Shown: positions 1 through 10,596 of the stretch, piece by piece
How positions within the stretch are numbered: position 1 is the first letter of the stretch
Layout: each line of letters opens with the position of its first letter
From: Schizochytrium sp. TIO01
Taxonomy: Eukaryota > Protista > Bigyra: Labyrinthulomycetes
Assembly: GCA_004764695.1 (NCBI GenBank)
Contig: SMSO01000024.1
Coordinates: 31,889 to 62,246, forward strand
Reading direction: 5' to 3'
DNA length: 30,358 nucleotides
Position numbers and translations under genes: made by a program
Notes under the pieces: generated by a model
What the model was told of the DNA's origin: nothing
The model's input: only the letters and a program-made list of their open reading frames with translations
Databases searched by the model: none

Positions 1-3000
1 CAAAGAAGTCTTTTCTTTTTTACAAAGAGAAGAAGAAGGAAATCTATATAATTTGATAGGCACAGCAGCAGAAGAAGAGTGATTGCTTTCTTATTGTGAA
101 GGAAAAGACAAAACAGAACCAGATCAACTGACTGGACCTTGTCTTTCCTGAACGAGATGAATGACAAAAGCAAACTTATTCATTATTACTCACAGTCTTC
201 GTGGCAACAACATTGGCTCGGAGGCGCAAAGGCCGTCGCAAAGGCACTCGAGGGATGCGAAGAACCTTCAAACTTAGATGTACGTTTGTGGGAATCATCC
301 ACGAGGGAAAGCTATCGTAATAGTCAGGACGCAAGCTTTTTCTTTCTTTCTTTTGAGTGCTTGGTGTTTGTAGTACTGGCTGGTACACTACCTAAGTAGT
401 TTACGTAGTTGGGTACGCAAAGAAAGGCCAAAGAAGTCTTTCTTTTTTACAAAGAGAAGAAGGAAATCTATATAATTTGGATAGGCAGCAGCAGCAGCAG
501 CAGAAGAAGAAGAGGTGATTGCTTTTTATTGTGAGGAAAAAACAAAACAAAAACAGGATCAACTGACTGGACCTGTTCTTTCCTGACAACGAATGAACAA
601 AAACAAACTTATTCATTTATACTCACCAGTCTGACAACAACACATTGGCGATGAGGGCGCAAAGGCCCGTCGCAAAGGCACTCGAGGGATGCAAGAACCT
701 TCAAATTTGTAGTACGTTTGTGGAATCATCCACGAGGGAAAGCTATCGTAATAGTCAGGACCAAGCTTTTTCTTTCTTTCTTTTTAGTGCTTGGTGTTTG
801 TAGTACTGCTGGTACACTACCTAAGTAGTTTACGTAGTTGGGTACGCAAAGAAAGGCAAAGAAGTCTTTTCTTTTTTACAAAAGAGAAGAAGGAAATCTA
901 TATAATTTGATAGGCAGCACAGCAGCAGAAGAAGAAGAGCTGATTGCTTTTTATTGTGAGGAAAAACAAAACAAAACAGGATCAAACTGACTGGAGCCTG
1001 TCTTTCCCTGACAACGAATGAACAAAACAAACTTATTCATTTATTACTCACAGTCTTTCTGAGAACAACATTGGCTCGATGAGGGCGCAAAGGCCCGTCG
1101 CAAAGGCACTCGAGGGATGCAAGAACCTTCAAACTTTAGAGTACGTTTGTGGAATCATCCACGAGGGAAAGCTATCGTAATAGTCAGGACCAAGCTTTTT
1201 CTTTCTTTCTTTTAGTGCTTGGTGTTTGTAGTACTGCTGGTACACTACCTAAGTAGTTTACGTAGTTGGGTACGCAAAGAAAGGCAAAGAAGTCTTTTCT
1301 TTTTACAAAGAGAAGAAGGAAATCTATATAATTTGATAGGCAGCAGCAGCAGCAGAAGAAGAGAAGAAGAGCTGATTGCTTTTTATTGTGAGAAAAACAA
1401 AACAAAACAGGATCAACTGACTGGACCTGTCTTTCCTGACAAACGAATGAACAAAACAAACTTATTCATTTATACTCACAGTCTTGGAAAACAACATTTG
1501 GCGATGAGGGCGCAAAGGCCGTCGCAAAGGCACTCGAGGGATGCAAGAACCTTCAACTTATTAGAGTACGTTTGTGGAATCATCCACGAGGGAAAGCTAT
1601 CGTAATAGTCAGGACCAAGCTTTTTCTTTCTTTCTTTTTAGTGCTTGGTGTTTGTAGTACTGCTGGTACACTACCTAAGTAGTTTACGTAGTTGGGTACG
1701 CAAAGAAAGGCAAAGAAGTCTTTTCTTTTTTACAAAGAGAAGAAGGAAATCTATATAATTTGATAGGCAGCAGCAGCAGAGAAGAAGAGGTGATTGCTTT
1801 TTATTGTGAGGAAAAACAAAACAAAACAGGATCAACTGACTGGACCTGTCTTTCCTGACAACGAATGAACAAAACAAACTTATTCATTTATACTCACAGT
1901 CTTTATAGGAACAACATTGGCTCGGAGGGCGCAAAGGCCGTCGCAAAGGCACTCGAGGGATGCAAGAACCTTCAAACTTTAAGTACGTTTGTGGAATCAT
2001 CCACGAGGGAAAGCTATCGTAATAGTCAGGACCAAGCTTTTTCTTTCTTTCTTTTTAGTGCTTGGTGTTTGTAGTACTGCTGGTACACTACCTAAGTAGT
2101 TTACGTAGTTGGGTACGCAAAGAAAGGCAAAGAAGTCTTTTCTTTTTTACAAAGAGAAGAAGGAAATCTATATAATTTGATAGGCAGCAGCAGCAGCAGC
2201 AGAAGAAGAAGAGCTGATTGCTTTTTATTGTGAGGAAAAACAAAACAAAACAGGATCAACTGACTGGAGCTGTCTTTCCTGACAACGAATGAACAAAACA
2301 AACTTATTCATTTATACTCACAGTCTTACAACAACAACATTGGCGATGAGGGCGCAAAGGCCGTCGCAAAGGCACTCGAGGGATGCAAGAACCTTCAAGA
2401 ATGTAAGTACGTTTGTGGAATCATCCACGAGGGAAAGCTATCGTAATAGTCAGGACCAAGCTTTTTCTTTCTTTCTTTTTAGTGCTTGGTGTTTGTAGTA
2501 CTGCTGGTACACTACCTGAGTAGTTTACGTAGTTGGGTACGCAAAGAAAGGCAAAGAAGTCTTTTCTTTTTTACAAAGAGAAGAAGGAAATCTATATAAT
2601 TTGATAGGCAGCAGCAGCAGAAGAAGAAGAGGTGATTGCTTTTTATTGTGAGGAAAAACAAAACAAAACAGGATCAACTGACTGGACCTGTCTTTCCTGA
2701 CAACGAATGAACAAAACAAACTTATTCATTTATACTCACAGTCTTAAGAACAACAACATTGGCGATGAGGGCGCAAAGGCCGTCGCAAAGGCACTCGAGG
2801 GATGCAAGAACCTTCAAACTTGAGTACGTTTGTGGAATCATCCACGAGGGAAAGCTATCGTAATAGTCAGGACCAAGCTTTTTCTTTCTTTCTTTTAGTG
2901 CTTGGTGTTTGTAGTACTGCTGGTACACTACCTAAGTAGTTTACGTAGTTGGGTACGCAAAGAAAGGCAAAGAAGTCTTTTCTTTTTTACAAAGAGAAGA

Positions 3001-4049
3001 AGGAAATCTATATAATTTGATAGGCAGCAGCAGCAGAAGAAGAAGAGGTGATTGCTTTTTATTGTGAGGAAAAACAAAACAAAACAGGATCAACTGACTG
3101 GACCTGTCTTTCCTGACAACGAATGAACAAAACAAACTTATTCATTTATACTCACAGTCTTTGGCAAAACAACATTGGCGATGAGGGCGCAAAGGCCGTC
3201 GCAAAGGCACTCGAGGGATGCAAGAACCTAACTCAATCTGAAGTACGTTTGTGGAATCATCCACGAGGGAAAGCTATCGTAATAGTCAGGACCAAGCTTT
3301 TTCTTTCTTTCTTTTTAGTGCTTGGTGTTTGTAGTACTGCTGGTACACTACCTAAGTAGTTTACGTAGTTGGGTACGCAAAGAAAGGCAAAGAAGTCTTT
3401 TCTTTTTTACAAAGAGAAGAAGGAAATCTATATAATTTGATAGGCAGCAGCAGCAGCAGAAGAAGAAGAGGCTGATTGCTTTTTATTGTGAGGAAAAACA
3501 AAACAAAACAGGATCAACTGACTGGACCTGTCTTTCCTGACAACGAATGAACAAAACAAACTTATTCATTTATACTCACAGTCTTCTGGGAACAACATTG
3601 GCGATGAGGGCGCAAAGGCCGTCGCAAAGGCACTCGAGGGATGCAAGAACCTTCAAGAATTGTAGTACGTTTGTGGAATCATCCACGAGGGAAAGCTATC
3701 GTAATAGTCAGGACCAAGCTTTTTCTTTCTTTCTTTTTAGTGCTTGGTGTTTGTAGTACTGCTGGTACACTACCTAAGTAGTTTACGTAGTTGGGTACGC
3801 AAAGAAAGGCAAAGAAGTCTTTTCTTTTTACAAAGAGAAGAAGGAAATCTATATAATTTGATACGGCAGCAGCAGCAGAAGAAGAAGAGGTGATTGCTTT
3901 TTATTGTGAGGAAAAACAAAACAAAACAGGATCAACTGACTGGACCTGTCTTTCCTGACAACGAATGAACAAAACAAACTTATTCATTTATACTCACAGT
4001 CTTGGTGACAACAACATTGGCGATGAGGGCGCAAAGGCCGTCGCAAAGT
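1..4049 (+). repeat. Tandem array of ~420-bp units (10 exons; periods 416-434 bp), each a ~335-nt intron plus an ~84-nt LRR exon
   Basis: The acceptor motif (t)actcacag|TCT recurs with exon starts at 196, 630, 1054, 1482, 1900, 2324, 2742, 3158, 3582 and 4000. The donor GTACGTTTGTGG follows the first nine. Intron sequence is nearly identical between units apart from a (GCA)n(GAA)n tract. The array continues off the left edge. Confidence 0.97.
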
Positions 4050-7000
4050 CTCTGCACAAAGCATGTCCTTCTGTTAAAATCTAGTAAGTTCCGTTCCTCT
4101 GCTGCTATCCCCAGCTTTGCGCAGAGCCTTGCCTTCGCTGGTTATGTCTCCATATGGACTTGTGAGAAGGCCGTCTTTAAATGCGTTCATCGTTTTTCTA
4201 ACAAGCGCTCTTATTCTCTTTCATTCGTGTATTCTCATTCGTTACAAAATGCAGCTATGACAATTTTTCTGGAAGTCCTAAAGAATTGTTCGAAACGGTG
4301 TGTTCTCCTGGAGAGGACATTGCAGATTTCTCGTCAGAGCTCGATTCCCATGCTTCCATAGAGGCTGCAGAAAGCGAGCCTTCTGCAGAGCCCAAGAACG
4401 AGCAAGATCGCGTTGAGGGCGCCGGGCCTGCTACTTTGGGTGGATCTGGGTAAGTTCATGCGGTCAGTCTTTGTTTGGGATCGTGTAATTATTCATTCCA
4501 CGAATTGTGTTGTTGAGATAGAGGGTATCCTAACTTTTGCTTTTGCCTTTATTACTGGTTCAACACCATTTTGCTCGTTTGCTTACGTCTTCTTGTTCGC
4601 CTCAGAGAACGGCCGGATGGAGCGAGCGTGAGTTTCGCTGATGTGGTGCAGCTTGCCAAGAAAGTCTCGGACTTGCGCGCGGACCGAGGTGGGGTCAGAG
4701 GAAACTCCCTGCAGACTGGGATTGCCCTGCTTGAGGAATTCGTTCGACCGGCGATTCAGGGCTACTTTGGCCAAGTGAAGTTGCGACAGGTTTTCGCTGA
4801 CATCAAGACCTCCAAAGAGAGTCTTGACGCTCTACAAGACCAGATTCGTGCAAGCTCTACAAATGGCTTGCCCAGCCTCATCCAAAAGCGGAACACCGAA
4901 CGGAGACACCTGCATTCACTTTTGCAGGTCGTGTACCCATGGGTTCGCGCCAACCTTTGCGAAAGTGATGAGAGTGCAATGCGAGAATTCAAAGTGAGAG
5001 TCAAAAGTTTGGTAAACGATCTAAAGATCAACCTTGCACCAGTCGATGAAGAGACCAGCACAGATGACTTCAAACACTGTCAAGAACTCGTTGTTCAGGC
5101 TGTCCAATGCGTGGAAGGGTACAAGAGGAGTGGAGAAGGTCATCCCAACAACATTGGTGAACGAAGCCAACAAGCTGTAAAGCGCGTCATCTCTCGATTG
5201 TCTGAGCTAGGACTTGGTGATGGATTATCGGTTGCCCTGAGGACACCTGAGCAGGCCATGGAGCTAGAACCCGAGTTGTCTGAACTTGAGAGTGCTCTCA
5301 AGGAAGAGATTGATGTTCTACAAGGAGATACACTTCGTACCCAATTGTGCGAAATACTTTGCGCGATAAGTTCAACCTTTGCTCGATTTGAAGGATACTC
5401 TGAAAGTGCTGCGTTGAATGACGCGAGCAATTACACACCAAAAGAGCTCTCTAGTCTGTATGACTATGCAGTATTGGGTTTGAAAGAACCAAATTTCTTA
5501 GATGTTGAGGCATTATACCAGAAACTTGACAAGGCGAGGACAGCAACAGAAAGATTAAAAAGTGCCGAAGCGGAACTAGTAGCTGAGGACTTGGATGAGG
5601 AAGAGCGAGCATATTTTAGAAATCGAATCACGAAAACAAGAGCTCATTCTCTCTCAAGGCAACCCTATCGACCTTAGCAAAGCTTTTCGTCATAAGCTTG
5701 CTGAGACTCTGCAACACGCGCAGGAACATTATCCAGAGTTGCTGCAAGATAGAGCCTGGCTGGAAAGGCTTCACGTAAGTGCAGAGGGTGTTTTTGAAGT
5801 AGCATGTTCTGACCTTTGGTTGACGAATGTCACAGTCGCGGACTTCAAGCCTGTCGGCGAGCCCCTTGCTTCCAGAGGTGGCAAGAGAGTACAAAAGGTT
5901 CTTGACAACGCTGGTAAAACTATGGTTTTGAAACAATTTCAACTCGGCCATTCGAGCCAACACAAAATATTCTACAGGCAAGCTGCAAATATGGGAAACG
6001 TAGTGTCTCAGCACGTGATACGTATCACTGGCGCTTTTGTGGATACCTCTAATGGAGAACCGCGTGGTTGTATTGTCATGCCTTTCTACGAGCAAGGTGA
6101 CCTTGCCAAGTGGATTGAGAGTCACCCTAACGAAGGCAAAGCAGCGCGCGACCGACTTGCTATGGGCCTGCTTATCGGTGTGGCGGATTTGCATACCCAC
6201 GGCATTGTGCATTGTGACATCAAACCAGAAAACATTTTCCTCACAAGCAACGGGACACCATTGATCGGCGACTTTGACGGCATCAAGGTTGCAGACTACA
6301 CTGCAACTTACACATCACTCCAGGCAACGCCACGGTACATTTGCCCCGAGTTGCAGAATGGGCCTGTAGATAGGTTTGAAACAGCGATGGATATGTACTC
6401 TGTGGGCATAAGCTTAAAGGAGCTGTATCCTACTGAGCGAACCGCTGCAATGCAGAAACTTATCGATGCTCTTACAGCAACAGACCCTGGCCAGCGTCCA
6501 ACCGCTCGCCAAGCACTCCAACATGAAGCTTTTGGAGCTCCTAAGATCCCTGTCAAGATATGTCTAGTATGCATGGAGGAGCATCTGCTTTCCGAGGGCA
6601 CGAGCTGCGAGGAGGGAGACTTCCTTTGCAGAGACTGTATCGAATCTTCAGTAGAAGCGGCGGCACGGCCACTTGCTAACGTAAGAGTAGATGCTGATGG
6701 AACGATGGCATGCATGAAACCTGAATGTAGTGGAAGGATATCAGGTCAAGAAATCACCCGTCTTGCACCAACTGCTTTGAATCACCTATTGTTGATTGCG
6801 AAGATGAAGGCAGAAAATGAAGCAGCAGTTTGGGCGGAGAAGGAGATCCAAAGGCGTATAGCACAAGTTTTACGTGCTGATGAACAGAATCGCGACGCAC
6901 GGCTTCATTTACTTCATATTCAAGAGAAGATCTTGAGCACATGTTGTCCGAACTGTAAGGCATATGTACACGATTTTGACGGTTGCTGTGCTGTAGAGTG

Positions 7001-7295
7001 TGGTAATGAGACTTGTGGTCATCACTTCTGCGCTTGGTGTCTTGGCTACAGTTCTCATGATGAAGATGCTTGTCATGATCATGTGAGAACCTGTTCAAGA
7101 AGACTTGGGGAAGATCCATTTTTTGCTGATTCTTTTGAGCAGGTTCGTGAGGCGTGGCAGTTGCTCCGCGCTGAACGTCTGCGTGAGTACTGGAATGCAC
7201 AAATTCAGGATAGAAATCTTCGACTCGTTCTGAAAGAGTTATTGTCGCCTTTGCTAACACCAGATATTGTTGGCGCAAACTTCAGATTGGAATAA
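196..7295 (+). CDS. Multi-exon gene, 5'-partial: at least 10 LRR exons + acidic linker exon + helical region + protein kinase + RING + RING2/IBR-like domain
   Basis: LRR exons 196-279, 630-711, 1054-1140, 1482-1565, 1900-1982, 2324-2406, 2742-2823, 3158-3242, 3582-3664, 4000-4083, then 4255-4449 and 4606-7295. All introns are GT-AG. The last three exons join in phase 2 with no stop at the junctions. One frameshift near 5612; exons 1-9 have small indels as assembled. Confidence 0.75.
4000..4083 (+). CDS. Last LRR exon of the left array (LGDNNIGDEGAKAVAKSLHKACPSVKI), probable capping repeat
   Basis: Exactly 84 nt and open, CACAG acceptor, GTAAGT donor at 4084. The 5' half matches the array and the 3' half diverges. 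Confidence 0.85.
4255..4449 (+). CDS. Acidic/Ser-rich linker exon (YDNFSGSPKELFETVCSPGEDIADFSSELDSHASIEAAESEPSAEPKNEQDRVEGAGPATLGGS)
   Basis: TGCAG acceptor ending at 4254, GTAAGT donor at 4450, 195 nt, open in the phase-2 frame set by the upstream exon. Not in the ORF track. Confidence 0.75.
4606..5677 (+). CDS. Helical/coiled-coil-like region, 5' part of the large terminal exon
   Basis: CTCAG acceptor ending at 4605 enters the 368-aa ORF frame at ERPDGASV. The sequence is L/E/A/K-rich and amphipathic. It overlaps the next ORF, consistent with a 1-nt frameshift in the T run near 5612. Confidence 0.75.
5595..7295 (+). CDS. Ser/Thr-type protein kinase domain (~5844-6533), RING finger (~6561-6729) and RBR RING2/IBR-like Zn domain (~6942-7094)
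   Basis: Kinase motifs MVLK, IVMPFYEQGDL, IVHCDIKPENIFL, IGDFD, TPRYICPE, DMYSVG, RPTARQALQH. RING: CLVC..C..FLCRDC..CMKPEC. RING2/IBR-like: CPNC..DGCCAVEC..CGHHFCAWC..H..C. Confidence 0.92.
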   Translation: MRKSEHILEIESRKQELILSQGNPIDLSKAFRHKLAETLQHAQEHYPELLQDRAWLERLHVSAEGVFEVACSDLWLTNVTVADFKPVGEPLASRGGKRVQKVLDNAGKTMVLKQFQLGHSSQHKIFYRQAANMGNVVSQHVIRITGAFVDTSNGEPRGCIVMPFYEQGDLAKWIESHPNEGKAARDRLAMGLLIGVADLHTHGIVHCDIKPENIFLTSNGTPLIGDFDGIKVADYTATYTSLQATPRYICPELQNGPVDRFETAMDMYSVGISLKELYPTERTAAMQKLIDALTATDPGQRPTARQALQHEAFGAPKIPVKICLVCMEEHLLSEGTSCEEGDFLCRDCIESSVEAAARPLANVRVDADGTMACMKPECSGRISGQEITRLAPTALNHLLLIAKMKAENEAAVWAEKEIQRRIAQVLRADEQNRDARLHLLHIQEKILSTCCPNCKAYVHDFDGCCAVECGNETCGHHFCAWCLGYSSHDEDACHDHVRTCSRRLGEDPFFADSFEQVREAWQLLRAERLREYWNAQIQDRNLRLVLKELLSPLLTPDIVGANFRLE

Positions 7296-10200
7296 ACTAA
7301 TCGAATTTTTAATGATTATCTTTTTCGTAAGCGCTGTTGACTAGAAGGCAAGAAAGTAACTGCTCTCCTCCAGACAGCACCGACGTCTGCCAACAGGATC
7401 AACATTTATAATGTGTATTCATGCAAGGTTCTTCGTGGGGGAAAGTACTAAAACTTAACATAAATTAAACATAAATCAGAACAAAGTAATAACTCGTGAA
7501 CATTTCACTGATGATATATATGCTTTCTTAACTTTATTTTTCCAGTTTGAGGAGCATATTTAGTTTATTATTAGATACTAATTCTTACTTTGTTTTACTC
7601 TCTCCGTTCCTTCGATAATTCATTCAGCAACACCGCAAGGTATCAGAAGCTCTAGGTTTAAGCCAAATCGTCGCAAAACAAACTCAAAAATACTTTTTGA
7701 TTCATCTCTCCTTTGGCAGTTCTCAATAGTTCTCATTTCGCAAAGCAACTTTTTATTTATTTTTTCATCAAAGCCAAAATGCAGTTCTTCTAACGGCACT
7801 GAAACCCTTAATGTGACGATTTCCTCTCGGTTGCGAGGTGCTGGGCTTTTCCAATTTGCAAAAGAACTCCATCAAAGGCAGGAGTAAGAGTAATTTTACA
7901 GACACAACCTTTCTCCGGACCTATGACGTCCTGGGTAATAAAGAGATTCGCTTTATCTTGGTCACTAGTTAATATTACACAACAAATCAATCGTAAAGGT
8001 CAGACCCTGAACACATGCCTTTGCACTCCAGACAACTTTTGAAAGCTGGAATGAAACCATCAGTTATGTAATCCTCGAAACTCTTTGATCTTGATATGCC
8101 ATGTATCCAGATTTACTATTCGAAGCATGGACTCTTCTCAAGAAAAACAGTCAATCTCCACATCTTAAATTCTCAGAACAACGTTGACTCAACGAACCTC
8201 CAAAGGCAAAACATTGCCTTCCTGATTACATCTTTAAGTTGTGCCTCAAATTTTTATTGAAGAGAGAATTGCAATGACGCACAGAGTGATAGATGAATCA
8301 GTTTACTCCACCAATCTGAGATTGCGAGAGAATGACAGAATTGTGGATACCAGAGAAGCTACAAAGTAAATGCACAATCGCTATTAAAAGATGTGCTCTA
8401 AGCAGCCAGAGGTTACATAGGAAGATGGCGGCATCTTTTTATGCTTCGGCGTACACAGTTCGCGATTGAAAACCTTGGAGATGAACATTCAGCACCAAAA
8501 CTTCAAGAGTTTTGTGCATTCAAGGATTTACTGTCGTAGTAAATGATCCGCTGCTGCTGCGTAAAAATCTTTAACAGGTGGAACAGTTCATACCCTGAGT
8601 AGGAGACTAAGGCTGTTAAAACTCAGAGCTCAAGGGGTTAGGCTAGCTCGTTTGTTCAACATAATTCTTTGGTTGTGTATTTCATATTCACTTATGAGTT
8701 TCCTTGGTCTCACTCCTTCGTATTTGATAGTCATATTCTTATAAGTCCTAGACTACGAGGACTTTTAATAGTGTGACAATGACTCTTCTCCACAAAACTC
8801 TTTGCTTGGTAATCTCAGCACAGAGCTTTTAAATTTTGCTGCGCCCCACGAACTGCATATTTTAATCTGGCTACTTGACTTAATAGAATCCCACACGATA
8901 AGCTTTATCAGTGTTCCAAGACATATTCTACAATGATGAATTTGAACATTACTACATTATGATTCATCCGTTGAAAGAAACTATTGGCTTTACATACTAA
9001 TGCCTTATCGAAGTTTTACAGCTATGTGTCGGACGGATCATCTCAAGGTGCCGAACACAAGTCCAAAGCCCATAGACTTTGACAATGGGCCTTGCCAGCA
9101 GTTCCTGAATATTAATTCTAACTTTTCTTTTCCTACGCTATCTCTTGGTGATCGCCTCACGCATACTTGCAATACACCTTTAAGAGGAGAACACGTGTAC
9201 TGAAGCTACATATGCTGATAGTGTTAATGAAAGTGTTAAGTGGTTTGCATCTCCCATGAGATCGCTGTGATGGTGTAGTGTTGTGCGCCCACTGAGATTG
9301 TGTTGTTCTTCAAACAAATATTAAGGTTGTTGTTCGAGTGAGTTTCAAAGCAGCTGAGACACATGTGAGTACACAGCCAAACAGAATGCGCGCAACCGTG
9401 CTTGGGTAGTCCCTTCATAAGTTTTTATACGCACTTCTCATCACATTCAACTTTGCAACACTAGATATTATAAATAGGTGGTTAACCATTAGGAATAGTA
9501 GCACCCAGTAACTTTCTTTCTTGTATCCAGCATGGGGAGTTAGCTTGTTGTGGTTTTCCAGGAGATACACAGCTGCTTGAATGAATCATGAACGTAGAGT
9601 GTTTCTTGCATCTGTGAAAGGAAGAATGATTAGTAGGAGAGAGTCAAACTATATCGGCGAGATTCGGACACGCAAAGGAAATCATTTAAGTGAACAAGTG
9701 TCACCTTTCCTTCTAGCACAGAACTGAAACACCACAACAAAAAACAGTGTAAAAATTCTTCTTTTTTTCTAAATGTATTTACTTAAAACTATGCAAACTA
9801 GACTAAAGCAACTACTTATAACCAATAACCTATACAAGACAGCTTTGGAAATTTTCAATCATGTCAGATAATTTCGTGCTTGGGAAAGAAACATGAGGCA
9901 TTTCTGAAGCATGCACTCAAGATTTGTAATATTCACAGAATAAATAATCGATTGCTCGAAAGGTCAACCAAGAGAGTAGAGGACCTACAGCTTTTTGCTA
10001 ATCTTGTTGGATTGCCTTGCAAACTCATTTTCAGGCTTGCTTCGTCCCCTTCGTTCCCTGACATAGACGCATCACTATGTTGACTCACGCTTCACCATGG
10101 TCTGGTCAAGAAGGTCTTCCTTTGAGCCTTACGAAGTCATGACGTAGTAATGTGTCAGTTTCTCCTTCTCAATAGTGTCAATCAAAAGCAGAATTTCATC

Positions 10201-10447
10201 ACTTGTTGATAAAGTTAGCCTGTGGCACATGTTTCTGTTTTGTCGAAAAAAGAGCAGACTTGCTGTTTACTTACTTTACTGTTGCTCAGCATCAGCTTGT
10301 ATTTCAACAAAGACAGATAAAACACTTCGTAGCAGAAAGCCTGCAAGGAAGCTTTTGTCTTCATGGCAGAGGCCAGAGACACTCGAAGGAAAGCTACTTG
10401 CTGCGTTGTTACTTTTTATATAAAAAGAATGAAATAGAGCTCTGGAG

Positions 10448-10453
10448 TATAAA
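10448..10453 (+). promoter_or_regulatory. TATA element upstream of 5S rRNA gene
   Basis: TATAAA 30 nt upstream of the 5S start. A TATAAA lies at a similar distance upstream of tRNA-Ser (17136-17141, minus strand). Confidence 0.5.
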
Positions 10454-10477
10454 TGCCAGAGTTCGACTAACTTAGTC

Positions 10478-10596
10478 ACATTCGATCATACCACGCGGGT
10501 AACACCTCATCTCATTCGCACTGAGAAGTAAAGTCGCGTAGGGCCGGGTCAGTAGTATGATAGGGGACTGCATGCGAAGCCCCGGTGTTGAATGTT
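10478..10596 (+). rRNA. 5S rRNA
   Basis: Begins ACATTCGATCATACC and ends GGTGTTGAATGT, with complementary termini. ~119 nt, internal AGTAGTATGATAGGGGAC box-C-like motif, followed by an oligo-T Pol III terminator. Confidence 0.95.

What the first reader, a model, noticed from the sequence alone, without database searches (positions are those of the whole stretch)
1..4083. The ~420-bp 'spacer' repeat is an array of one-LRR-per-exon cassettes with hypervariable ends: candidate diversifying receptor system
Seen: each unit is an intron (GTACGT...ACTCACAG) plus an ~84-nt exon reading LxxNNIG(D/S)EGAKAVAKALEGCKNLxxL. The ~335-nt introns and the exon core are almost invariant. The two codons after the first Leu differ in nearly every unit (RG, SE, YR, KN, WQ, GD directly; YN and SG after restoring one T), as do the last codons (QTL, QELY, TQ..). 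Known: 28-aa RI/NLR-class LRRs bind ligands through the x positions of xLxLxxN, and one-LRR-per-exon shuffling has been described for Ectocarpus LRR-ROCO genes. Inference: repeats that I recall being treated as subtelomeric spacers (LORE-TEARS) are coding cassettes whose homogenised introns act as recombination handles, generating variable recognition surfaces.
Basis: partly seen in the sequence, partly recalled or inferred. Interest (0 to 1): 0.95.

Follow-up and report, generated by a model that had tools for sequence, protein, structure and literature searches.

The report
Spacer repeat is LRR gene exons
A 424-base chromosome-end "spacer repeat" of this Aurantiochytrium-like protist is really the exon-intron array of an expressed gene family of at least 40 members, in which each 84-base exon encodes one leucine-rich repeat that varies almost only at its predicted ligand-contact residues.

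Summary
Window 1-4083 carries 9.6 copies of a 424-bp unit, each a ~340-nt GT..AG intron plus one RI/NLR-type LRR exon.

- **Exon lengths.** In the window they read 79-87 nt because of assembly indels. Short-read contigs offer indel variants that bring all five off-length exons in the laid stretch to 84 nt. In 20 paralogous arrays, 126 of 159 exons are exactly 84 nt, and 13 arrays splice into stop-free ORFs of up to 21 repeats.
- **Expression.** RNA-like runs cover exons about 100 times more deeply than introns and carry GT..AG joints that the DNA run lacks.
- **Variation.** Introns and exon core are homogenised (pi about 0.035 and 0.01-0.02). The five x codons of LxxLxLxxN are hypervariable (1.1-3.2 bits).
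- **Gene.** A 53-nt ATG exon without signal peptide, then 3-22 LRR exons, a helical region, a protein kinase and a Cys-rich RBR-like tail. There are at least 40 copies.
- **Identity.** Position (between two 5S genes, TTAGG telomere) and unit size match "Group 5 LORE-TEARS", published as non-coding spacers. The 385-bp "Group 0" array has the same design.

Best reading: a germline receptor-like family shaped by concerted evolution plus retained binding-face diversity. Programmed or somatic diversification is untested. This scan reached the same reading on other pieces of this genome (s1-824447).

The parts
1..195 (+). 3' part of an array intron. The array runs on upstream into C23:30407-31888, which the operators withhold (reads N).
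196..279 (+). LRR exon 1 in the window (island RG; core carries compensating assembly indels)
630..711 (+). LRR exon 2 (82 nt as assembled; indel noise)
1054..1140 (+). LRR exon 3 (87 nt as assembled; three extra bases in the core; island SE)
1482..1565 (+). LRR exon 4 (84 nt, but with internal indels)
1900..1982 (+). LRR exon 5 (LYRNNIGSEGAKAVAKALEGCKNLQTL; 83 nt as assembled; reads add G after 1981, giving 84)
   Evidence: Pfam LRR_6 E=0.0095; PDB matches to DRC5 and to 5irm/5irl, which I take from memory to be NOD2
2324..2406 (+). LRR exon 6 (reads add T after 2325, giving 84; island YN). An RNA contig joins exon 5 to exon 6 in frame.
2742..2823 (+). LRR exon 7 (reads add TA after 2821, giving 84; island KN)
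3158..3242 (+). LRR exon 8 (reads drop one base at 3235, giving 84; island WQ; 3' island of the L-T-H-L-N class)
3582..3664 (+). LRR exon 9 (83 nt as assembled; a minor read variant adds A after 3588)
280..3999 (+). The homogenised array introns, ~335-350 nt each, GTACGT...ACTCACAG, lying between the exons listed. No Rfam family and no unusual fold.
4000..4083 (+). Last LRR exon (island GD). Its 3' half is unique (..AKSLHKACPSVKI), the diverged edge repeat of the array.
   Evidence: LRR_6 E=2.7e-4
4084..4254 (+). Intron, GT..AG. The spliced joint 4083->4255 appears in three RNA-like runs and not in the DNA run.
4255..4449 (+). Linker exon (YDNFSGSPKELFETV...), in phase with the last LRR exon
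4450..4605 (+). Intron, GT..AG. Joint 4448->4605 (cut +1) in three RNA-like runs.
4606..7295 (+). Long 3' exon: a ~340-aa helical region with no Pfam hit, a protein kinase (about 5889-6497; HCD, so non-RD) and a Cys-rich RING/IBR-like tail (about 6570-7100); stop at 7293-7295. The apparent frameshift near 5631-5633 is an extra base in the assembly.
   Evidence: Pkinase E=7.4e-29; IBR_2 only E=4.1; reads leave out one base at 5633; 38 of 40 paralogs align one or more bases shorter than the query there
10478..10596 (+). 5S rRNA gene on the centromere side of the gene. A second 5S lies at C23:29007-29125, so the gene sits between two consecutive 5S genes.
27863..30282 (-). Related second family: a 385-bp array ('Group 0') of exact 84-nt LRR exons (LxxNxIGDEGAKAVAxALKENRSLTSLx), hypervariable at positions 2, 3 and 5
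   Evidence: LRR_6 E=4.3e-6, above the Pfam cut-off

Best explanation
Window 1-4083 is the LRR-coding part of one member of a germline gene family with at least 40 members, most of them near contig ends in an Aurantiochytrium limacinum-like thraustochytrid.

Gene layout: a 53-nt ATG exon (MTTASKIEDIREDTTEI-type, no signal peptide), then 3-22 exons of 84 nt in symmetric phase, each encoding one 28-residue RI/NLR-type leucine-rich repeat. Then come a linker exon and a 2.7-kb exon with a helical region, a non-RD protein kinase and a Cys-rich RBR-like tail.

The 424-bp exon-plus-intron units evolve in concert within and between chromosome ends, by unequal crossing-over and gene conversion. That keeps introns and the structural core of the repeat 97-99% alike. 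Two short islands escape this: exon nt 5-10 and nt 73-84. Across the splice junction they form the x residues of LxxLxLxxN, which in known RI-type LRRs lie on the concave beta-sheet face. These islands stay extremely diverse and are reshuffled among units.

Shown: coding capacity, splicing, expression, localisation of the variation, copy number, array-size variation.

Inferred: that selection for diverse binding surfaces maintains the islands; that recombination in the conserved stretches shuffles them; and that the proteins are intracellular sensors signalling through the kinase and E3-like module (an innate-immunity-like role).
For: Repeat and exon structure:
- define the unit.
- Genome-wide, 126 of 159 exons are 84 nt and 7 are 99 nt (in frame). 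Thirteen arrays give stop-free spliced ORFs of up to 21 repeats.

Expression and splicing:
- In run X16, bins with an array exon or a large part of one reach 517-19,030, against 20-391 in intron-only bins. The DNA run X1 is flat.
- GT..AG joints 4083->4255 and 4448->4605, and in-frame exon-exon joints inside the array, appear in the RNA-like runs (the array joints in X16 and X20) and never in X1.
- RNA contigs reproduce island haplotypes also seen in the genome.

Localised variation:
- Entropy is 1.1-3.2 bits at positions 2, 3, 25, 26 and 28, about 1 bit at 5 and 8, and at most 0.41 bits at the other 21 positions. L1, L24, L27 and N4 are kept in 97-100% of exons. 102 of 112 exons are distinct, and none has a stop codon.
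- Intron pi is 0.035 against 0.37-0.74 in the islands.

Concerted evolution across loci:
- Intron distance is 0.0265 within arrays and 0.0337 between arrays. The unique 3' part differs by 2-13% between copies.

Shuffling and turnover:
- Islands are almost randomly assorted (mutual information z=3.1 within an exon, 1.3 across the intron).
- Arrays hold 3-22 exons.
- L017 and L023 have 99.4%-identical 5' flanks but share no exon.

Gene completeness: the ATG exon is found in 17 of the 21 arrays examined, and intact (53 nt, MT..-type) in 16.

Domains: Pkinase E=7.4e-29; LRR_6 on single exons; PDB neighbours DRC5, designed RI-type LRRs, and 5irm/5irl, which I take from memory to be NOD2.

Relatives carry the same kinase and C-terminal module behind LRR_6, ankyrin or TIR domains. 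One relative, P0003, has ordinary, mutually divergent 28-aa repeats, so the homogenisation seen here is derived.
Against: - Synonymous sites inside the islands are also very divergent (pS 0.95 at Leu27, 0.34 at Leu24, 0.35 at Asn4, against 0.027 in the core). The island edges are sharp to the nucleotide. Conversion plus selection must then act with very short tracts or very strong filtering, and a local mutational process is not excluded.
- No recombination-aware test of selection was run.
- The RNA status of runs X15, X16 and X20 is inferred from the exon/intron contrast and the joints. It is not on record.
- Logan contigs pool all paralogs, so expression of this particular copy is not shown.
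- Exons 1-4 of the window lie outside the laid stretch, so their indels are not checked.
- No ligand or function is known, and the RBR-like tail has no significant Pfam hit (IBR_2 E=4.1).
Confidence: 0.75

Rival explanations
1. Programmed or somatic diversification. During clonal growth the arrays are rearranged, by VLR-like copy-choice or by VSG/var-like mosaic gene conversion between chromosome ends, using the identical introns and cores as homology. Cells of one culture would then carry different receptor repertoires.
For: The architecture would allow it: symmetric-phase exons, 97-99% identical introns and cores, positions near chromosome ends, near-random island assortment, and identical flanks with unrelated arrays. 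The same idea was raised for the Ectocarpus one-LRR-per-exon genes (PMC3341825).
Against: - No silent cassette library: about 345 or more units roughly equals about 40 genes times about 9 exons, and every array examined sits inside a complete gene.
- L019 and L021 are 100% identical over the flank and all six exons.
- The RNA junctions I could check match germline adjacencies.
- The 3' islands fall into a few haplotype classes with linked synonymous states, which looks inherited.
Confidence: 0.07
2. Germline hypermutation confined to the islands. An untemplated or templated mutational process targets the exon ends next to the splice sites, and purifying selection keeps Leu and Asn.
For: High divergence at synonymous as well as non-synonymous sites inside the islands, with nucleotide-sharp borders. 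29 of 50 5'-island hexamers are singletons.
Against: All four bases vary at all island positions. I saw no strand or base bias that would suggest a known mutator. The 3' islands form classes (LQTL with TTA, LTQL with CTT, LTYL with CTG), which independent hits would break up. No mechanism is known.
Confidence: 0.08
3. The repeats are mainly structural spacers for chromosome-end or rDNA maintenance, as proposed for LORE-TEARS, and the coding potential is incidental or vestigial.
For: They hold regular positions relative to the telomere, the rDNA and the 5S genes at many chromosome ends (bioRxiv 10.1101/2023.06.15.545109).
Against: Intact ORFs across up to 21 exons, no stop in 112 exons, structural residues kept, spliced transcripts, and a complete kinase gene attached. 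The two roles are not mutually exclusive.
Confidence: 0.05
4. The variable sites are sequencing or assembly noise, or the array is a decaying pseudogene.
For: The window's own copy and C7's copy (L020) have off-length exons and indels in the conserved core.
Against: The noise is made of indels, in two loci. The island differences are multi-nucleotide substitutions that keep the frame, and independent short-read DNA and RNA contigs reproduce them. The other arrays are clean.
Confidence: 0.03

Closest known systems
LORE-TEARS Group 5 (and Group 0) of Aurantiochytrium limacinum MYA-1381 (bioRxiv 10.1101/2023.06.15.545109)
   Same: Unit size (about 421 bp published against 424 bp here; about 385 bp for Group 0), tandem arrays, position between two consecutive 5S genes (Group 5) or upstream of the 18S gene (Group 0), TTAGG telomere, rDNA transcribed toward the telomere.
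   Different: [quoted passage not shown] Here they are the exons and introns of expressed LRR-kinase genes. Groups 1 and 2 on the same contig show no LRR signature.
Ectocarpus one-LRR-per-exon ROCO and LRR-kinase genes (Zambounis et al. 2012, PMC3341825; PMC11378527)
   Same: A stramenopile; one LRR per exon; exons of equal length whose length is a multiple of three; repeat number varies among paralogs; variation lies on the concave face; proposed immune receptors.
   Different: Here the repeats are 28-aa RI-type in 84-nt exons. Introns and exon cores are homogenised to 97-99% across the whole genome. The genes sit among rDNA and 5S units, many of them near contig ends. The output module is a kinase plus an RBR-like tail, not ROC-COR.
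Plant NLR and Cf-type LRR gene clusters
   Same: Sequence exchange homogenises the framework while the solvent-exposed xxLxLxx residues stay hypervariable (established knowledge, recalled, not tested here).
   Different: In plants the LRRs are usually not one per exon, and the clusters are not linked to rDNA.
Lamprey VLR genes
   Same: LRR modules with variable concave-face residues.
   Different: A VLR is an incomplete germline gene completed somatically from flanking silent cassettes. Here every array is already a complete spliced gene and no silent library is seen.
Subtelomeric contingency families (Plasmodium var, trypanosome VSG)
   Same: A large family near chromosome ends, ectopic exchange between ends, mosaic members.
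   Different: Those encode surface antigens of parasites. These are cytosolic LRR-kinase proteins of a free-living heterotroph.

Membership tests
RI/NLR-type leucine-rich repeat (Pfam LRR_6, PF13516) | 28-29-residue period with LxxLxLxxN followed by an xIGxxGaxxLaxaL helix | tested here: met
   84-nt (28-aa) exons. L1, N4, I6, G7, L18, L24 and L27 are kept in 94-100% of 112 exons.
RI/NLR-type leucine-rich repeat (Pfam LRR_6, PF13516) | Significant profile match | tested here: inconclusive
   Exons were searched singly, because the joined product was not submitted. E=0.0095 and 2.7e-4 (below the 23.4-bit cut-off) for the 424-bp family; E=4.3e-6 at 26.8 bits (above the cut-off) for the 385-bp family. 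PDB phmmer finds DRC5, designed RI-type LRRs, and 5irm/5irl, which I take from memory to be NOD2.
LORE-TEARS Group 5 | About 421-bp tandem unit lying between two consecutive 5S rRNA genes near a TTAGG telomere | tested here: met
   Period 424. 5S genes at C23:29007 and at window 10478. (CCTAA)n at C23:1-421.
LORE-TEARS Group 5 | Non-coding spacer without similarity to known sequences | tested here: not met
   It codes for LRR exons that are spliced and expressed.
Exon-shuffling LRR receptor genes (Ectocarpus type) | One repeat per exon, with symmetric phase and equal length | tested here: met
   84-nt exons carrying 1 nt of the junction codon at the 5' end and 2 nt at the 3' end.
Exon-shuffling LRR receptor genes (Ectocarpus type) | Repeat number and order differ among paralogs | tested here: met
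   3-22 exons per array. Apart from the identical L019/L021 pair, at most one exon is shared in any of the 30 pairs printed, which include the most similar flanks.
Exon-shuffling LRR receptor genes (Ectocarpus type) | Positive selection at concave-face sites by codon models | not tested
   Only entropy and pN/pS were computed. pN/pS in the islands is about 1.4, but the sites are near saturation and the units recombine.
Exon-shuffling LRR receptor genes (Ectocarpus type) | ROC-COR GTPase output domain (ROCO subfamily) | tested here: not met
   Pfam finds only Pkinase in the 3' exon.
VLR-like somatic assembly system | Incomplete germline gene plus silent donor cassettes | tested here: not met
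   The arrays are inside complete genes: the ATG exon is found in 17 of the 21 arrays examined, and a kinase exon follows each.
VLR-like somatic assembly system | Somatic sequence variation within a clone | not testable with these tools
   Only pooled contigs were available, and the single read-laying run was used.
Protein kinase (PF00069) | Profile match with a catalytic-loop motif | tested here: met
   E=7.4e-29 at 101 bits. The HCDIKPEN motif is read directly from the ORF translation.
RBR / RING-IBR E3 ligase | RING1-IBR-RING2 profile matches | tested here: inconclusive
   Only IBR_2 at E=4.1. Cys-rich blocks are visible in the sequence.

The most novel reading that the evidence does not exclude
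The LRR arrays are exchanged between chromosome ends often enough during mitotic growth that a clonal population holds many receptor repertoires. That would be a receptor-side counterpart of var/VSG switching and an adaptive-like recognition system in a unicellular heterotroph that lives with persistent mirusviruses. The identical introns and repeat cores would serve as the homology for exchange, and the two islands as the payload.
Probability: 0.1. Interest if true: 0.95.

Novelty: new variant of a known kind. Interest (0 to 1): 0.72.

Why it matters
- It changes the reading of a published genome feature. At least two of the five LORE-TEARS classes, proposed as chromosome-end maintenance spacers, are exon-intron arrays of expressed genes.
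- It reveals a large, rDNA-embedded family of LRR-kinase-(E3-like) proteins near chromosome ends, with a hypervariable predicted binding face. These are candidate innate-immune sensors in thraustochytrids, a group with persistent mirusvirus infection and no described immune receptors that I could find.
- It extends the 'one LRR per exon' receptor design from brown algae to a distant stramenopile, in an extreme form where everything but the contact residues is homogenised.
- That extreme form is a clean natural system for asking how gene conversion and selection, or a targeted mutational process, can produce nucleotide-sharp islands of diversity.

Tried and rejected
- **Intron as a hidden RNA gene.** No Rfam family at gathering threshold. 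The only sub-threshold hit was mir-92 (18.9 against 47 bits, E=0.13). Fold z-score -1.25. Rejected.
- **All LORE-TEARS classes as LRR arrays.** The 411-bp (Group 1-like) and 371-bp (Group 2-like) arrays on C23 show no LRR-like ORFs. Only Groups 5 and 0 qualify.
- **Other Pfam searches.** The helical region (4610-5629) and the linker exon gave no family. The RBR-like tail gave only IBR_2 at E=4.1.
Statistics therefore rest on 20 of about 40 loci.
- **The search for homologous proteins with P0003** returned only 8 proteins and no full-length member of this family.
- Exons were searched one by one by reference. For that reason no structure prediction of the spliced LRR domain was made.
- **The 5' end of this particular gene** lies in C23:30407-31888, which is withheld (N). 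I did not try to recover it. The ATG-exon description comes from paralogous loci.
- **Noise and pseudogene readings** are rejected (see the rival explanations).

Full report
**Where the window lies.** The window is the last 30,358 bases of a 62,246-bp contig, G000:C23:31889-62246. The contig begins with 421 bp of (CCTAA)n. Reading inward from that telomere:
- 371-bp and 411-bp tandem arrays;
- a 28S-5.8S-18S unit transcribed toward the telomere, then a 5S gene transcribed away from it at C23:29007;
- a 15.8-copy array of about 385-395 bp at C23:22186-28314, between those two;
- then the window: the 424-bp array (1-4048), a unique coding region up to 7295, a second 5S gene (10478), three tRNA genes, a second rDNA unit (17793-23322, minus strand) and a 385-bp array (27863-30282).

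The TTAGG telomere, the gene orientations and the unit sizes match the description of Aurantiochytrium limacinum MYA-1381. There, 'Group 5' LORE-TEARS (about 421-bp units) lie between two consecutive 5S genes and 'Group 0' (about 385 bp) lie upstream of the 18S gene. They are said to lack similarity to GenBank sequences and are proposed to serve chromosome-end maintenance (bioRxiv 10.1101/2023.06.15.545109). The organism name is my inference from this match.

**The observation.** Tandem Repeats Finder gives period 424, 9.6 copies and 93% matches. Every unit has a GTACGT donor and an ACTCACAG acceptor around an exon reading L-x-x-N-N-I-G-(D/S)-E-G-A-K-A-V-A-K-A-L-E-G-C-K-N-L-x-x-L-x. One base at the exon's 5' end and two at its 3' end belong to the junction codon. 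The exons are therefore symmetric in phase, and any number of them can be joined in frame.

As assembled, the window's exons measure 84, 82, 87, 84, 83, 83, 82, 85 and 83 nt (the stricter parser gives 79 for the sixth), which would break the frame. Short-read DNA contigs laid on 1900-7300 carry, for each of the five off-length exons in that stretch, an indel variant that restores exactly 84 nt: G after 1981, T after 2325, TA after 2821, one base fewer at 3235, A after 3588. The apparent frameshift near 5631-5633 likewise disappears in the reads. At that place 38 of 40 paralogs align one or more bases shorter than the query. The window copy is thus a noisily assembled, probably intact gene. Exons 1-4 lie outside the laid stretch and remain unchecked.

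**Genome-wide picture.**
- The unit has at least 345 matches in this 64-Mb genome.
- The unique 3' part has about 40 full-length copies at 87-98% identity, many of them near contig ends.
- I fetched the arrays upstream of 20 of these copies.
- Arrays hold 3 to 22 LRR exons.
- Of 159 exons with both splice sites found, 126 are exactly 84 nt and 7 are 99 nt (an in-frame 15-nt G/T-rich insert). Most of the rest differ by one or two bases, mainly in the window and in one C7 locus.
- Thirteen arrays give stop-free reading frames when their exons are joined, up to 21 repeats in a row. This joining was done only inside a script.

**Expression and splicing.** Three runs guessed to be RNA (X15, X16, X20) behave as RNA. 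In X16, bins containing an array exon or a large part of one reach 517-19,030, while intron-only bins reach 20-391. In the DNA run X1 the two kinds of bin are alike. GT..AG joints 4083->4255 and 4448->4605 occur in all three RNA-like runs and never in X1. Joints inside the array occur in X16 and X20, again never in X1. One example is 1981->2326 with the letters GATCT between, which reads Q-T-L-D-L-Y-N-N-N-I-G in frame. Loose ends of RNA contigs carry island variants that also occur in the genomic exons (DK, NN, L-T-H-L-N), as well as the ATG-exon sequence. Logan contigs pool all paralogs, so this shows that the family is expressed, not that this copy is.

**Gene model.** In 17 of the 21 arrays examined (intact in 16), a 53-nt first exon (MTTASKIEDIREDTTEI or a close variant, acidic, no signal peptide) lies about 230 nt upstream of the first LRR exon, in the matching phase. 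In C23 that part falls in a withheld stretch, and I did not try to recover it. After the array come:
- the last LRR exon (4000-4083), with a unique 3' half;
- a linker exon (4255-4449);
- one long exon (4606-7295) holding a helical region without a Pfam match, a protein kinase (Pkinase E=7.4e-29, catalytic loop HCD) and a Cys-rich tail that scores only E=4.1 against IBR_2.

Single LRR exons match Pfam LRR_6 (E=0.0095, 2.7e-4 and 4.3e-6). In the PDB they match DRC5, designed RI-type LRRs, and 5irm/5irl, which I take from memory to be NOD2.

The kinase-plus-tail module recurs in many proteins behind other N-terminal domains. These are LRR_6, ankyrin and, in a Hondaea fermentalgiana protein, a precomputed PF13676 domain, which I take to be TIR. 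The LRR-bearing relative P0003 has ordinary, mutually divergent 28-residue repeats, so the uniformity seen here is a derived state.

**Where the variation lies.**
- *Amino acids.* In 112 clean exons from 16 loci, entropy is 3.22, 3.18, 2.96, 2.25 and 1.10 bits at positions 2, 3, 28, 26 and 25. It is 1.06 bits at position 8 (a D/S dimorphism), 1.02 at position 5, and at most 0.41 at the other 21 positions. L1, N4, L24 and L27 are kept in 97-100% of exons. 102 of the 112 exons are distinct, and none contains a stop.
- *Nucleotides.* Pi is 0.55-0.74 at exon nt 5-10 and 0.37-0.67 at nt 73-84 (nt 81, the middle base of Leu27, is invariant). It is mostly at or below 0.05 in the exon core, and 0.035 (median 0.018) over 339 intron columns.
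- *Meaning.* Positions 25, 26, 28, 2 and 3 are the five x of LxxLxLxxN. In RI-type LRRs these lie on the beta-strand of the concave face (established knowledge, not modelled here). The intron splits this strand, so each recognition strand is assembled from two exons.
- *The 385-bp arrays* show the same design, with entropy of about 3.2, 3.2 and 2.8 bits at positions 2, 3 and 5.

**How it probably works.** Introns differ almost as little between chromosome ends (0.0337) as within an array (0.0265), while the unique 3' part differs by 2-13% between copies. The units therefore evolve in concert across the genome.

The two islands are almost randomly assorted with one another. Mutual information is only 3.1 SD above shuffles within an exon, and not significant across the intron. 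Two loci with 99.4%-identical 5' flanks share no exon. This fits frequent unequal crossing-over and conversion with breakpoints in the conserved core and introns, with diversity retained at the contact residues.

Two observations limit this reading:
1. Synonymous sites inside the islands are also highly divergent (pS 0.95 at Leu27, 0.34 at Leu24, 0.35 at Asn4, against 0.027 in the core), and the island borders are sharp. The pattern is therefore not simply point mutations fixed by positive selection after homogenisation.
2. The 3' islands fall into a few classes with linked synonymous states: LQTL mostly with TTA, LTQL with CTT, LTYL with CTG. That favours old haplotypes preserved against conversion over fresh random mutagenesis. 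A local mutational process is still not excluded.

Against a programmed or somatic mechanism:
- I found no silent cassette library.
- One pair of loci (L019 and L021) is identical over flanks and six exons.
- The checkable RNA junctions match germline neighbours.

None of this is a direct test.

**Comparison and novelty.** The nearest described system is the one-LRR-per-exon ROCO and LRR-kinase genes of Ectocarpus, which show exon shuffling, positive selection on the concave face and a proposed immune role (PMC3341825; PMC11378527). This case differs in several ways:
- the repeat type (28 aa);
- genome-wide homogenisation of introns and cores;
- embedding among rDNA and 5S units near chromosome ends;
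- a kinase plus RBR-like output module;
- having been published as non-coding spacers.

I found no paper linking thraustochytrid subtelomeres to LRR genes. The library lacks most subscription-journal papers, so this is not proof of absence.

This scan has already reached the same reading on other pieces of this genome (s1-824447 with a follow-up, and several first-reader notes). My analysis was done independently and agrees with it.

Noticed in passing
window 27863-30282 (-) and L013:2186-8314 (C23:22186-28314): The 385-bp arrays ('Group 0' by position) are also one-LRR-per-exon arrays with exact 84-nt exons (LxxNxIGDEGAKAVAxALKENRSLTSLx). They are hypervariable at positions 2, 3 and 5. Their introns differ from those of the 424-bp family.
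   Followed up: partly
L019, L021, L029, L035, L018 (C32, C24, C30, C5, C35 arrays): Some exons are 99 nt instead of 84, through an in-frame 15-nt G/T-rich insert at the 5' island (peptides such as GGGFFGG, GGWGLGC, GGGGWGC). This is a loop insertion exactly at the variable site. I wonder whether these G-runs contribute to the G-quadruplex predictions reported near some LORE-TEARS; this was not tested.
   Followed up: no
window 5631-5633: The apparent frameshift splitting the 3' exon into two ORFs is an extra base in the assembly. DNA and RNA contigs leave it out, and 38 of 40 paralogs align one or more bases shorter than the query there.
   Followed up: yes
P0002, P0004, P0020, P0152, P0153 (relatives, some from Hondaea fermentalgiana): The same kinase and C-terminal Cys-rich module sits behind ankyrin repeats, LRR_6 plus ankyrin, or a precomputed PF13676 domain (which I take to be TIR) in related thraustochytrid proteins. 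This is a modular 'sensor repeat - kinase - E3-like' family.
   Followed up: partly
L012:1-1629 (C23:10001-11629) and L011:1010-8873: The 411-bp and 371-bp arrays between the telomere and the 28S gene show no LRR signature. The 411-bp unit carries a recurring minus-strand ORF fragment (..SSEDPYSIVKTFLLTRS.FLNILLL) of unknown meaning.
   Followed up: partly
L019 (C32 end) and L021 (C24 start): Two contig ends carry 100% identical flank and six-exon arrays. Either this is a very recent duplication between chromosome ends or one end was assembled twice.
   Followed up: no
window 4000, loose end in run X20: An RNA contig joins ATG-exon sequence directly to the last LRR exon type. This could be a paralog with almost no array, or skipping of all array exons. 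The symmetric exons would allow in-frame skipping.
   Followed up: no
window 15162-15235 (+), 16005-16075 (-), 16993-17107 (-): Three tRNA genes lie between the 5S gene and the 28S gene. The third spans 115 nt against a 71-position model, so it may contain an intron.
   Followed up: no
C23:30407-31888 (just upstream of the window); also stretches in L020, L031, L034: These stretches are withheld and read N. In C23 the withheld stretch covers the expected ATG exon and the first LRR units of this gene.
   Followed up: no
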